Part shown: positions 33,101-35,822 of the stretch, one piece after another | Layout of the letters: the number at the start of each line of letters is the position of its first letter | How positions within the stretch are numbered: the stretch's first letter is position 1 | Source of the DNA: Diadema antillarum | Taxonomy: Eukaryota | Reading direction: 5' to 3' | Assembly: GCF_040938485.1 (NCBI RefSeq) | Contig: NW_027270903.1 | Location: 2,914,001-2,978,000, forward strand | Length of the DNA: 64,000 nt | Made by a program: the position numbers and the translations under genes | The notes under the pieces: model-generated | What the model saw: only the letters and a program-made list of their open reading frames with translations | The model's database searches: none | Told to the model about the DNA's origin: nothing

Positions 33101-35822
33101 AAGGAAAAACAATTTCAGGGGGCTTGGCAGCACTAAATAACATACCGACAGTCCTTCGCAGAGCCTGCACTTCTTGCTGCAGCCTCAGGATGATTTCATC
33201 AGCCAGCTGTGCCCGCTGTTCAAGGCGCTGGATCACTGCACTGGATGCTGCCATTACACGAGGAGTCGCCAACAATCTAGCTACAAACCTGCATGAAAAT
33301 CACCAGTTTGGGGACGGGGTGGGGGTAGGGAGTAAAAATTAGGGCCAAACATTTATGAAATGGAAATCACATCAGCTCCATTATGAGATACCTGTATTCT
33401 TAAAACATTCATCATTTTGCAACTTGTTAGTGATCACTTCAATAATAGACAATGCCGAGTACAGGGGGCAGATTGGAGTTGTTGGATTGGCACACTGCAT
33501 GCACGGGAGGTCTAAGCACCTAGCAGAAGGTAGAACCATGGGCAGTGTGAATATCAAACTGGAAGAAGAAGGCACTGGCTGAGGCCATGAGGAAGTGAAC
33601 AGCATGCACCAAGATACAGTGTACATCTATGTACAGTTGTAATGTCTGAAGTGCCTGACTATGGGAAAACAAACTAGCATAGCAGTGGCTTAGCAGACTT
33701 AAATTACAGTAAGCCAACCAGTATTTGTCCACCTGCCAGAATCCTTCCACTGATAACAAGCCAGCAAATCCTCAATTGTCACAACACAGGCATATCACAT
33801 TTCTCACCTGGCATCGTCATTCGCAACAGGACGCTCCCTTAATCACCTATCCACCAAAACTCCCAAATTTCACCATCGAAAATGCGAAATCAGGCCCAAT
33901 TTTTAAAAGCGTTCGGGAGTGCTGTCTAGTGTTAGATATCAGGGTCACCAAAAAAGCACTAAAAATTGAGAAATGTGCCATTCTGTTGCAAGACTTTTTG
34001 CATATCGCAAGCTCAGAGTATGATGGTATCCGCAAAAATGCAAAAAAAACCCCCACCAAAATCTCCGTACATGCTGGTGCAAGTTTTATGCAGAGGGGTT
34101 GAATGCAAGTGCCATCTTGTCAGAATTCGTCCACCAACAGGCGCCGCAATGTCCCCGATGCAACCTTGCGCCAACAAGGTATGCCGCAGCGCATTTTTCA
34201 GCTGCCCTGAACACACATAGCGCCCGGCCAATATGCTGGTCGGGGCGTGGATGGATTCTAGTCGGTTATCATCCCATAGGCCCATAGCCACAGCAACATA
34301 TCTTTGGATTTTCTGAAATTCCATGATGTATCAAATAAAACCAATTTGCAATGAAAAAAGTTTATATTAGATCTCAATTTAACATTCGTTGATAGATATG
34401 ATTTATGAATGATTTTGTATATCATTTTAGTTGAAAAATATTGCAGAAAAGTTTTTGTGGCCAAATTCTGCACTCTCGTCATTATACAGTGGTTTATACT
34501 CTAGATGAACTTACTTGTTGTATCTTGAAAAGTATGCATGAACTGAAATCAAATTTATACTATAAGTAGAACAAGGCTGTGAAAGATAATTAAACTTTAA
34601 AGTGTCTTTGAATTCGGTGGCCGTGTGGGATAAAGTGCCTTGCCATAATTTAAAGGACACCACCACTACTACTGAGAGGCACGTAGCGTACTGCACTGCC
34701 ACTGCCACTGGACTAAAGGTCTCGTTTGGACCTGAACCAATAAATTTTTGATTGAGTGACTTGACAAAATGGTTTCATATGTTCTCTATCAAGACTGGAA
34801 TACAATACTTCCATGTCAGATGTGATGTGATGTGATGTGAAAATAATGCTCTATCTATAGACAATGCAATCCAGTTCGGGAAACCCACTCACAAGGGGGG
34901 CCCCTCCTTATAAGTAACCCGTCCCCCCTATAAGTAACCCCGTCCCCCTTATAAGTAACCCCCAGGGCACCCCTTATAAGGAGTCTCCACGCTTTTTTGC
35001 AATGCAACGCGAAAATGAAAGGACTGCGGCAATTCGCTTGATTATGTCCATAAAGCTTCACAAGTTTCCTAGTTACTCACGAAATTTGAGCAAAATCGGT
35101 TTGAGGCATCATATCTAAAATCATGGATTTAAATGCGATGTCAAACGACCCATGCGAATGCTGAAATGCGAGCGATTACTGGCGTGAGTGTCGCCAGGCG
35201 CGGCGGCGCGGCAATGCTTGAGTGCAGACGTGGCGACTGGATTACTGGCGTGAGTGTCGCCAGGCGCGGCGGCGCGGCAATGCTTGAGTGCAGACGTGGC
35301 GACTGAGTACGTACTCAGTCGCCACGTCTGCACTCAAGCATTGCCGCGCCGCCGCGCCTGGCGACACTCACGCCAGTAATCGCTCGCATTTCAGCTTTCG
35401 CATGGGTCGTTTGACATCGCATTTAAATCCATGATTTTAGATATGATGCCTCAAACCGATTTTGCTCAAATTTCGTGAGTAACTAGGAAACTTGTGAAGC
35501 TTTATGGACATAATCAAGCGAATTGCCGCAGTCCTTTCATTTTCGCGTTGCATTGCAAAAAAGCGTGGAGACTCCTTATAAGGGGTGCCCCGGGGGTTAC
35601 TTCTATTATAAGGGGGACGGGGTTACTTATATAGGGGGACGGGTTACTTATAAGGAGGGGCCCCCCTTGTGAGTGGGTTTCCCGAACTGAATCCATATTG
35701 ACATATTGTATACAACCAGGACCTCCTTGCCTGCCTGACACCTTTGCTATCCCACAGACCCCAGACTTGCCCAGTAAACAGATGGCACAGCCAAAATGTA
35801 AGAGTCTAAAAAACACTTACAT
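27190..35822 (-). CDS. AIMP1: AIMP1/p43 (pro-EMAP II). Short form 310 aa from ATG 33254; long form 322 aa from a split ATG 35822-35821/33288. Exons (35822-35821), 33288-33146, 32034-31933, 31449-31282, 30600-30386, 28535-28367, 27359-27190
   Basis: N-terminal coiled coil [62 protein letters not shown], Pro/Lys-rich linker, tRNA-binding OB fold [85 protein letters not shown]. All GT-AG; 933 nt from the short-form ATG. Confidence 0.95.
27628..27783. repeat. Short interspersed element with degenerate (CCCTAA)n telomere-like core
   Basis: AGGGCAATTAC ... GTAATTGCCCT ends around CCCTAACCCTAACCC tracts; a related reverse fragment lies at ~36316-36400. Confidence 0.65.
29249..30227 (+). mobile_element. 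HINE/DINE-1/pearl(Tsp)-like non-autonomous element with ~5 tandem 158-bp cores
   Basis: Starts AACAAG; subterminal IR TGTCCCCGCCG (29286-29296) / CGGCGGGGACA (30213-30223); cores start at ~29300, 29458, 29616, 29774, 29933; (GACG/CACG)n tract ~30105-30178; 3' stem-loop. Confidence 0.8.
32120..32357 (-). mobile_element. TACTGTATAC MITE, family D
   Basis: TACTGTATACACCGAATATTTCACGAGG ... TATATGGCGTAAACAGTA; reverse complement of 42164-42407. Confidence 0.75.
33830..34215. repeat. Diverged interspersed repeat shared with ~52010-52370
   Basis: Shared blocks ATCGCAAGCT..TGATGGTATCC..AAAAATGCAAAA..GGGTTGAATGCAAGTGCC..ATTTTTCAGCTGCC in the same orientation. Confidence 0.6.
34872..35689. mobile_element. 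818-bp spacerless foldback (palindromic) element in AIMP1 intron 1
   Basis: Centre GACTGAGTAC|GTACTCAGTC at 35310/35311; arms near-identical; termini CAGTTCGGGAAACCCACTCA; AATC on both flanks; 66-bp tandem duplication in the left arm. Confidence 0.9.

What the first reader, a model, noticed from the sequence alone, without database searches (positions are those of the whole stretch)
34872..35689. 818-bp spacerless near-perfect palindrome (foldback element) in AIMP1 intron 1
Seen: the arms meet with no loop (GACTGAGTAC|GTACTCAGTC). I found only one mismatch by eye in the inner ~330 bp. The left arm has an extra 66-bp tandem copy next to the centre, the ends carry ~20-nt-period CCTTATAAG subrepeats, and AATC flanks both sides. 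Known: long spacerless palindromes are unstable (cruciform extrusion, deletion) and transcribed ones form dsRNA. Inference: a recent or self-converting foldback transposon that would give AIMP1 pre-mRNA a ~370-bp hairpin (ADAR or endo-siRNA substrate) about 130 nt from the exon 1 donor.
Basis: partly seen in the sequence, partly recalled or inferred. Interest (0 to 1): 0.7.

Follow-up and report, generated by a model that had tools for sequence, protein, structure and literature searches.

The report
Young palindromic MITE copy near AIMP1
The 818-bp palindrome is real, but it is one recently inserted copy of a roughly 860-copy enzyme-less "jumping gene" family in the sea urchin Diadema antillarum, and it is missing from the matching copy of this region elsewhere in the same assembly, so it is a tidy but ordinary transposon insertion.

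Summary
Window 34872-35689 is a spacerless palindrome with arms about 99% complementary. It has a 66-bp exact tandem unit in the left arm, 21-bp-period end repeats and AATC on both sides.

It is not a singular structure. Its 27-nt tip occurs 855 and 869 times on the two strands of the 1.75-Gb assembly. Full copies (basic form about 746 bp) lie on many contigs, and 38 sampled copies each have their own perfect 4-bp duplication (consensus A-W-W-T, ATAT commonest). It is therefore a non-coding palindromic (foldback-shaped) MITE.

The insertion is young. The 92-97% identical counterpart of this region (C147 and C15:3.59 Mb) joins the two flanks directly with one AATC. The assembly is the published uncollapsed two-haplotype D. 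antillarum assembly, so the counterpart is most likely the other haplotype.

Arm symmetry reflects youth, not self-conversion: within-copy identity is 99.1% and between-copy identity 98.6%. Palindrome centres are hypervariable; only 54 loci keep the exact centre. The 66-bp duplication is private to this locus.

The intron-1 placement is plausible (good donor and acceptor) but has no RNA evidence. I found no transposase partner; the target-site pattern resembles Sola2. Earlier notes of this scan describe other foldback families in this genome.

The parts
34868..34871 (.). Left copy of the 4-bp target-site duplication, AATC
   Evidence: The same four bases follow the element at 35690-35693. The empty counterpart carries a single AATC.
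34872..35689 (.). The element: an 818-bp palindromic non-autonomous transposon copy. The family's basic form is about 746 bp.
   Evidence: No Pfam family reaches its threshold for the internal ORFs. No Rfam family reaches its gathering score.
34872..34886 (+). Left terminal 15-mer, CAGTTCGGGAAACCC, the shared tip of the inverted repeat
   Evidence: The same tip, with one or two changes, ends a second family at 50975-51523. The 27-nt tip has 855 and 869 genome hits on the two strands, against 0 for the control.
35675..35689 (-). Right terminal 15-mer, the reverse complement of the left tip
34906..34980 (.). Left subterminal repeats, period 21, 3.4 copies, each carrying CCTTATAAG. Presumed transposase-binding sites (inference).
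   Evidence: TRF; families D2-D4.
35593..35655 (.). Right subterminal repeats, period 21-22, the mirror of the left set, with a 5-nt and a 1-nt indel relative to it
35174..35305 (.). Two exact 66-bp tandem units; the extra one makes the left arm longer. ACTG stands at both unit boundaries, which points to slippage at a 4-bp microhomology (inference).
   Evidence: 100% identity. The junction 28-mer is unique in the genome.
35301..35320 (.). Spacerless symmetry centre, GACTGAGTAC|GTACTCAGTC, with the axis between 35310 and 35311
   Evidence: The exact 30-nt centre is kept at only 54 loci in the genome.
35396..35396 (.). The single inner-arm mismatch, T where the left arm predicts A
   Evidence: alignment. 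In one search, table 3, a contig of another copy reads A here.
35690..35693 (.). Right copy of the target-site duplication, AATC
35819..35820 (-). Predicted splice donor GT (…GTCACAT|GTAAGTG) of a putative non-coding AIMP1 exon 1. It lies 130 nt from the element's nearest end.
   Evidence: Read from the sequence only. There is no RNA evidence.
33146..33288 (-). AIMP1 exon with the start codon (ATG at 33254-33252). It is preceded by the acceptor ttttcatgcAG (AG at 33290-33289) and followed by a GT at 33145-33144.
   Evidence: Downstream tRNA-binding-domain exons lie at 30302-30631 and 28329-28619 on the minus strand.

Best explanation
The palindrome is one young copy of a high-copy, non-coding, palindromic MITE family of Diadema antillarum.

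- The family is moved in trans by a cut-and-paste (DDE/DDD-type) transposase. That enzyme presumably recognises the 15-nt tip CAGTYCGGGAAACCC and the 21-bp-spaced CCTTATAAGG sites, and it makes 4-bp staggered cuts at A-W-W-T targets.
- This copy landed at an AATC site about 1.6 kb upstream of the AIMP1 start-codon exon, probably inside a 5'-UTR intron.
- It is absent from the counterpart copy of the region in the same assembly, most likely the other haplotype.
- Its near-perfect symmetry is simply youth.
- The extra 66-bp unit is a private slip at an ACTG microhomology beside the unstable palindrome centre.

Shown: family membership, copy number, target duplications, the empty counterpart site, the private duplication and the hairpin potential. 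Inferred: the type of transposase, the role of the subterminal motifs, intronic transcription, and any dsRNA consequence.
For: - Family: there are 649 first-look candidates. Full-length matches of 91-97% lie on 13 other loci, and half-element matches reach 97-99%.
- Copy number: the terminal 27-mer has 855 forward and 869 reverse hits, against 0 for the control.
- Transposition signature: 32 of 34 copies, then 38 distinct copies, each have their own perfect 4-bp flanking duplication. The pooled consensus is A(0.84) W W T(0.84), with ATAT in 8 of 38.
- Empty site in the assembly: the left flank maps to C147:996240-996805 and the right flank to C147:995703-996239, directly adjacent. The same holds at C15:3593419-3594521.
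- Counterpart region: 14 kb around the site is collinear with those places at 92-97% identity.
- Empty site in a public run: a 447-nt contig of run X1 bridges 34739-34873 to 35716-35993.
- Haplotypes: the assembly total of 1,754,659,819 bp equals the published uncollapsed D. antillarum assembly GCA_040938485.1, which retains both haplotypes (PMC13511894).
- Youth: arm identity is 99.1% within copies and 98.6% between copies.
- The duplication junction is unique in the genome.
- There are no coding or curated RNA-family signals.
Against: - I found no autonomous partner, so the transposase type and current activity are inferred.
- The counterpart copies could be a recent segmental duplication rather than the allele. 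There are three copies in the assembly, two of them giving identical scores. In that case 'heterozygous' would read 'inserted after the duplication'.
- The X1 contig matches the counterpart type, so it is not independent proof of absence in another individual.
- No read-level view of the filled site was possible.
- The intron assignment has no RNA support.
Confidence: 0.85

Rival explanations
1. Assembly or foldback-read artefact: the palindrome was created by a chimeric long read or by patching and does not exist in the animal.
For: No read-level evidence for the filled site could be obtained; contigs of public runs break at the repeat and at the centre. The assembly was patched in places with Nanopore reads of other individuals.
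Against: The same palindromic architecture, with the same tips, recurs at hundreds of loci. Each locus has its own 4-bp target duplication. This copy has clean AATC duplications and an exactly matching empty counterpart. Artefactual foldbacks have neither conserved ends nor target duplications.
Confidence: 0.02
2. A self-maintaining palindrome: the arms are kept identical by intra-element gene conversion, or the element is regenerated from one arm through a hairpin intermediate at each transposition.
For: The arms are almost perfect in nearly all copies. Several half-elements end exactly at the centre. Centre sequences vary by a few bases, rather like hairpin-opening products.
Against: Within-copy arm identity (99.1%) is no higher than expected from between-copy identity (98.6%) in a young burst. 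Asymmetric centre-proximal duplications and the 5-nt and 1-nt indels between the end repeats persist uncorrected. The 66-bp unit is present in one arm only.
Confidence: 0.06
3. An exapted hairpin: the insertion acts as a source of small RNAs or as an edited dsRNA that regulates AIMP1.
For: It has a hairpin potential of about 370 bp. It sits 130 nt from a good predicted donor. There are sub-threshold hits to many miRNA-precursor models.
Against: The counterpart copy and organism B lack it, so it cannot be a conserved function. The Rfam hits fall below every gathering score, on both strands, to unrelated plant and animal families, which is the generic signal of any long perfect hairpin. No RNA data are available.
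Confidence: 0.04

Closest known systems
Foldback transposons (Drosophila FB, Galileo, Tetris; sea urchin TU elements)
   Same: The element consists almost wholly of two inverted arms and has no coding capacity. The arm ends are internally repetitive, and rearranged forms are diverse. The kind is already known from sea urchins (PMC4079207).
   Different: Those families make 7-10-bp target duplications and are linked to the Mutator or P superfamilies (PMC4079207); TU elements make 8 bp by my own recollection. This family makes 4 bp. Here the tandem subrepeats occupy only about 80 nt per end, the arms are mostly unique sequence, and the element is under 1 kb.
Palindromic MITEs (for example the human MADE1 family that gave rise to mir-548; from my own knowledge, not checked here)
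   Same: Short, high-copy and non-coding, with nearly full-length inverted arms, homogeneous copies, insertion in or near genes, and a perfect hairpin when transcribed.
   Different: MADE1 is about 80 bp with TA duplications (Tc1/mariner). This family is about 746 bp with A-W-W-T 4-bp duplications and an unknown transposase.
Sola superfamily, especially Sola2
   Same: Sola elements make 4-bp target duplications, and AT-rich AWWT targets (ATAT, AAAT, ATTT) are reported for Sola2 elements (PMC3627910). Sola terminal repeats range from 11 to 1124 bp (PMC10741241). Earlier notes of this scan report Sola-like transposase genes in this genome.
   Different: No Sola transposase was found between ends of this family. 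The one transposase-bearing element I could fetch has different termini (L065, 617-aa ORF with a PF25273 match). I could not compare the termini with reference Sola2 elements.
Sister family in the same window (50975-51523)
   Same: Its tip is the same with one or two changes (CAGTCCGGGAAACCC at the left end), it has a 4-bp duplication (ATAT), and it has palindromic architecture (492 of 549 positions self-complementary).
   Different: Its subterminal motif is CCTCATGAGG instead of CCTTATAAGG, and its interior is unrelated; only the first 20 nt align.

Membership tests
MITE (miniature inverted-repeat transposable element) | Terminal inverted repeats with target-site duplications at independent loci | tested here: met
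   38 distinct copies each have a perfect 4-bp duplication. The tips are conserved.
MITE (miniature inverted-repeat transposable element) | High copy number and homogeneous copies | tested here: met
   There are 855 and 869 tip hits on the two strands. Arms are about 98.6% identical between copies. The assembly holds about two haplotypes, so the haploid number is roughly half.
MITE (miniature inverted-repeat transposable element) | Small and non-coding | tested here: met
   The basic form is 746-749 bp, which is at the upper end of the usual MITE size. The longest internal ORFs are 57-70 aa, are mirrored on both strands, and reach no Pfam threshold.
Foldback elements in the strict sense (FB/Mutator-related; sea urchin TU) | Element made almost entirely of long inverted arms | tested here: met
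Foldback elements in the strict sense (FB/Mutator-related; sea urchin TU) | Target duplication of 8-10 bp | tested here: not met
   The duplication is 4 bp in 38 of 38 scored copies. The foldback figures come from PMC4079207.
Sola (Sola2) | 4-bp target duplication, AT-rich (AWWT) | tested here: met
   The pooled consensus is A 0.84, T/A 0.54, A/T 0.54, T 0.84, with ATAT commonest. The Sola2 pattern comes from PMC3627910.
Sola (Sola2) | Autonomous relative with the same termini encoding a DDD transposase | tested here: inconclusive
   None appeared among 19 unpaired or distantly paired ends, 7 tip-variant loci and 18 further tip-variant positions. The long copy L055 holds a nested LINE, not a transposase.
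Sola (Sola2) | Terminal nucleotides matching reference Sola2 elements | not testable with these tools
   No Repbase or Dfam library was on hand, and the defining paper (PMC2727372) is not held.
piggyBac / Kolobok | TTAA target duplication (from my own knowledge) | tested here: not met
   0 of 38 duplications are TTAA.
Ginger | Termini 5'-TG...CA-3' with 4-6-bp duplications (PMC10741241) | tested here: not met
   The termini are CA...TG.
Tc1/mariner | TA target duplication (CAGT-type tips occur in Tc1-like elements; from my own knowledge) | tested here: not met
   The tips begin CAGT, but the duplication is 4 bp and variable, not TA.
Curated RNA families (miRNA precursors, ribozymes) | Score at or above the Rfam gathering threshold | tested here: not met
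   The best hit is MIR1437, at 109.9 bits against a threshold of 168. All 22 hits are below threshold, most of them on both strands.

The most novel reading that the evidence does not exclude
The family and its sister families share the 15-nt tip but carry different palindromic 10-mers (CCTTATAAGG, CCTCATGAGG). Together they could be the non-autonomous swarm of a still-active, undescribed echinoderm transposase lineage, Sola2-like by target. That lineage would have a two-part recognition: a shared cleavage tip and swappable dimer-binding sites. On the same reading, the hundreds of young copies form a natural record of how a perfect palindrome of about 750 bp is revised at its centre in an animal germ line. 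Only 54 of about 860 copies keep the exact centre, and many carry independent centre-proximal duplications.
Probability: 0.2. Interest if true: 0.45.

Novelty: new member of a known kind. Interest (0 to 1): 0.25.

Why it matters
For AIMP1 it matters little. The insertion is absent from the counterpart copy of the region, is non-coding, and lies upstream of the coding exons. At most it could make one allele's pre-mRNA carry a long hairpin.

Its modest value lies elsewhere.

- It documents a recently mobile, apparently undescribed MITE family in D. antillarum. About 30% of that genome is reported as unclassified repeats (PMC13511894).
- Its 4-bp A-W-W-T signature sets it apart from the classical 8-10-bp foldback elements of sea urchins and flies.
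- The many near-identical copies with scrambled centres are a ready-made data set on palindrome instability.
- Present/absent insertions like this one are also useful markers in a species of conservation concern.

Tried and rejected
1. Autonomous partner among unpaired ends. I fetched 19 loci with unpaired or distantly paired ends. Most were truncated or rearranged copies, several ending at the palindrome centre. The sequence beyond the arm was shared only between L017 and L043, and no transposase ORF turned up.
2. The 10-kb pair of ends on C29 is two separate fragments with no ORF of 130 aa or more.
3. Tip variants: CAGTYCGGGAAACCCY gave 7 hits and ...RD gave 18. L055 is a 6.6-kb copy with an ATAT duplication, but its 1268-aa ORF is a nested LINE (RVT_1, endonuclease, RNase H). 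L056 holds reverse-transcriptase fragments. L057, L058 and L061 are 2-2.4-kb non-coding relatives, one of them carrying another repeat.
4. The gene at C15:7.07 Mb gave only itself as a protein query. It does hit Pfam PF25273, and PF25273 finds 112 places in the genome. The one locus I could still fetch, L065, has other termini. None of the listed PF25273 places on contigs C1-C30 lies near a listed family tip.
5. Literature. The tip 13-mers occur in no held paper. The defining Sola paper and the Yuan and Wessler paper are not held.
6. RNA evidence. No RNA run holds the stretch. Run X10, of unknown kind, covers only one arm of some other copy.
7. I first read the X1 empty-site contig as proof of polymorphism between individuals. 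I withdrew that reading after finding that it matches the counterpart copy in the same assembly.
8. The big protein searches, structure prediction and fold searches were not used, because there is no protein to study.
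Full report
**Observation.** Window 34872-35689 is an 818-bp palindrome whose arms meet without a spacer at GACTGAGTAC|GTACTCAGTC, with the axis between 35310 and 35311.
- The arm pairs are 290 nt at 99%, 71 nt at 100% and 59 nt at 98% complementary.
- A global alignment of the element to its own reverse complement shows few differences. There is one inner mismatch (35159 against 35396). There is one A/G mismatch, a 5-nt indel and a 1-nt indel in the end repeats. The left arm has one extra 66-bp unit.
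- That unit (35174-35239 and 35240-35305) is an exact tandem repeat.
- Both ends carry 21-bp-period repeats with CCTTATAAG, and AATC flanks both sides.
- As a single strand it folds into one hairpin of about 370 bp. The RNA energy is -778.5 kcal/mol (z -72) and the DNA energy is -516.5 kcal/mol (z -73).

**It is one member of a large family.**
- Searching the window's own 1.75-Gb assembly with the element gave 649 first-look candidates. Full-length matches of 91-97% lie on 13 other loci, and many arm-length matches reach 97-99%.
- The terminal 27-mer, allowing two mismatches, occurs 855 times forward and 869 times in reverse. The reversed control pattern occurs 0 times.
- The commonest form is 746-749 bp.

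**It moves by cut and paste with a 4-bp stagger.**
- In 32 of the first 34 copies examined, and finally in 38 distinct copies, the four bases before CAGTTCGGG equal the four bases after its complement, and they differ from copy to copy.
- The element is palindromic, so I pooled both orientations. The target is A (0.84), T/A (0.54), A/T (0.54), T (0.84). There is weaker symmetric context (pyrimidine at -1, T at -3). ATAT is the commonest target at 8 of 38, and TTAA never occurs.

**The site is empty in the counterpart copy of the region.**
- The left flank (34300-34871) matches C147:996240-996805, and the right flank (35702-36220) matches C147:995703-996239. The two matches are directly adjacent on the minus strand.
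- The same holds at C15:3593419-3594521.
- A 14-kb query around the site is collinear with both places at 92-97% identity, including AIMP1 exons.
That assembly retains both haplotypes: 84.4% of BUSCO genes are duplicated and heterozygosity is 2.52% (PMC13511894).
- The counterpart is therefore most likely the other haplotype, and the insertion is heterozygous in the sequenced animal. Three copies exist, two with identical scores, so a recent duplication cannot be excluded. Either way the insertion is younger than a split of 3-8% sequence divergence.
- A 447-nt contig of public run X1 (organism A) bridges 34739-34873 to 35716-35993, and a contig of X3 (organism B) joins 34858 to 35715. The X1 contig has the counterpart's small differences, including the missing 8-bp CATATTGA repeat. 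I therefore count it as confirmation of the empty form, not as an independent individual.
- The element's words are about as deep in organism B's contigs as in organism A's, which suggests the family is abundant there too.

**Symmetry reflects youth, not conversion.** I took a 195-nt unique stretch of each arm in 27 full copies. Arms of the same copy are 99.1% identical on average (median 99.4%). Arms of different copies are 98.6% identical (median 98.9%). A recent burst from a symmetric master gives exactly this pattern, and no self-correction is needed. Uncorrected asymmetries are common (next section).

**The centre is the unstable part.**
- The exact 30-nt centre is present at only 54 loci. 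If all roughly 860 copies had started with it, point mutation at about 1% would have removed only about a quarter of them.
- The central 50-150 nt of 27 copies show one- to four-base changes at the axis, a 10-nt asymmetric loop (GGAGACTTTC) and many different partial duplications next to the centre.
- Several copies are half-elements that stop at the axis, or deletion forms that join the axis to the far end repeats.
- The junction of this copy's 66-bp duplication occurs nowhere else in the genome. ACTG stands at both boundaries, so a slip at a 4-bp microhomology after or during insertion is the simplest account (inference).
- This is the known behaviour of long palindromes (established knowledge), seen here in natural replicates.

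**Gene context.**
- AIMP1 is on the minus strand. The exon with the start codon is 33288-33146 (ATG at 33254-33252). It is preceded by a good acceptor (ttttcatgcAG, AG at 33290-33289).
- The tRNA-binding-domain exons lie at 30302-30631 and 28329-28619.
- A strong donor (CAT|GTAAGT, GT at 35820-35819) lies 130 nt from the element.
- The intron-1 reading is therefore plausible, at perhaps 60%. No RNA run was available, so the element could equally be upstream of the transcription start. Because it is palindromic, either transcript strand would form the same hairpin.

**No coding or curated RNA signal.** Internal ORFs are 57-70 aa, are mirrored on both strands, and reach no Pfam threshold. Rfam gives 22 sub-threshold hits to unrelated miRNA-precursor and bacterial sRNA models, mostly on both strands. 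That is the generic score of a perfect hairpin.

**Which transposase?**
- A second family in the same window (50975-51523, ATAT duplication) shares the tip with one or two changes. It has CCTCATGAGG repeats and an unrelated interior. Further 2-2.4-kb relatives exist.
- I found no member with a transposase. The one long copy holds a nested LINE.
- The one PF25273-type transposase element I could fetch has other ends.
- By structure the family is not Mutator/FB-like or P/Galileo-like (7-10-bp duplications, PMC4079207). It is not Ginger (TG...CA ends, PMC10741241). It is not TTAA-type and not Tc1/mariner.
- The 4-bp A-W-W-T target matches what is reported for Sola2 elements (PMC3627910), and Sola terminal repeats can be very long (PMC10741241).
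- I put Sola2-like mobilisation at about 40-50%, an unassigned or other superfamily at the rest.

**Limits.**
- There is no read-level confirmation of the filled allele.
- There are no RNA or small-RNA data.
- The copy sample is biased toward copies with intact tips.
- Copy numbers refer to an assembly holding about two haplotypes, so the haploid number is roughly half.
- Earlier notes of this scan describe other foldback families in this genome, for example a 1.39-kb palindrome in a TMEM254 intron. They reach the same kind of verdict.

Noticed in passing
window 50975-51523: A second palindromic element of 549 bp, with 492 positions self-complementary. Its tips are nearly the same as the first family's (CAGTCCGGGAAACCC at the left end, two changes at the right), it has an ATAT duplication, it carries CCTCATGAGG subterminal repeats, and its interior is unrelated.
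   Followed up: partly
window 27000-41000; G000:C15:3585615-3603632 and G000:C147:987898-1005913: The AIMP1 region is present three times in the assembly. The two other copies give identical scores (92-97% identity to the window). One of them lies inverted only about 645 kb away on the same contig. This could be uncollapsed haplotypes, possibly a false inverted duplication inside contig C15, or a real duplication.
   Followed up: partly
window 29244-30230: A repeat of about 985 bp inside an AIMP1 intron has at least 35 copies elsewhere at 97-99% identity. It is another very young interspersed family.
   Followed up: no
L055:501-7130 (G000:C20): A family-1 copy with an ATAT duplication is split by a nested non-LTR retrotransposon with an open 1268-aa endonuclease, reverse transcriptase and RNase H frame.
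   Followed up: partly
G000, 112 places; L065:2884-4734: Pfam PF25273 (DUF7869) marks several multi-copy transposase-like families with open frames of 586-650 aa. One family gives the same score at about 35 places, which suggests young DNA transposons. The L065 element has inverted ends of about 140 nt beginning TATATTCAAAAT.
   Followed up: partly
window 33906-34207, 36322-36472, 36775-36925, 37379-37500: These short stretches have very high summed contig depth in all DNA runs (thousands to 40,000), so they are further high-copy repeats around the insertion. I found no inverted repeats in two of them.
   Followed up: partly
window 34819-34840 and 35694-35709: A (GATGT)4.4 microsatellite lies 32 nt left of the insertion. 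An 8-bp tandem repeat (CATATTGA CATATTGT) lies right after the duplication and is single in the empty counterpart. The left flank is much more diverged from the counterpart (82%) than the right flank (93%).
   Followed up: no
L047:1-960 (G000:C12:33200-34160): A family-2 half-element and a family-1 half-element lie tip to tip, 14 bp apart, and the family-1 arm runs at its centre into 45 nt of family-2 interior. This is a rearranged composite of the two families.
   Followed up: partly
runs X6, X15, X16, X20: Marine metagenome runs hold 5-12% of the stretch's words. This is probably the repeat family, or urchin DNA in the water samples.
   Followed up: no
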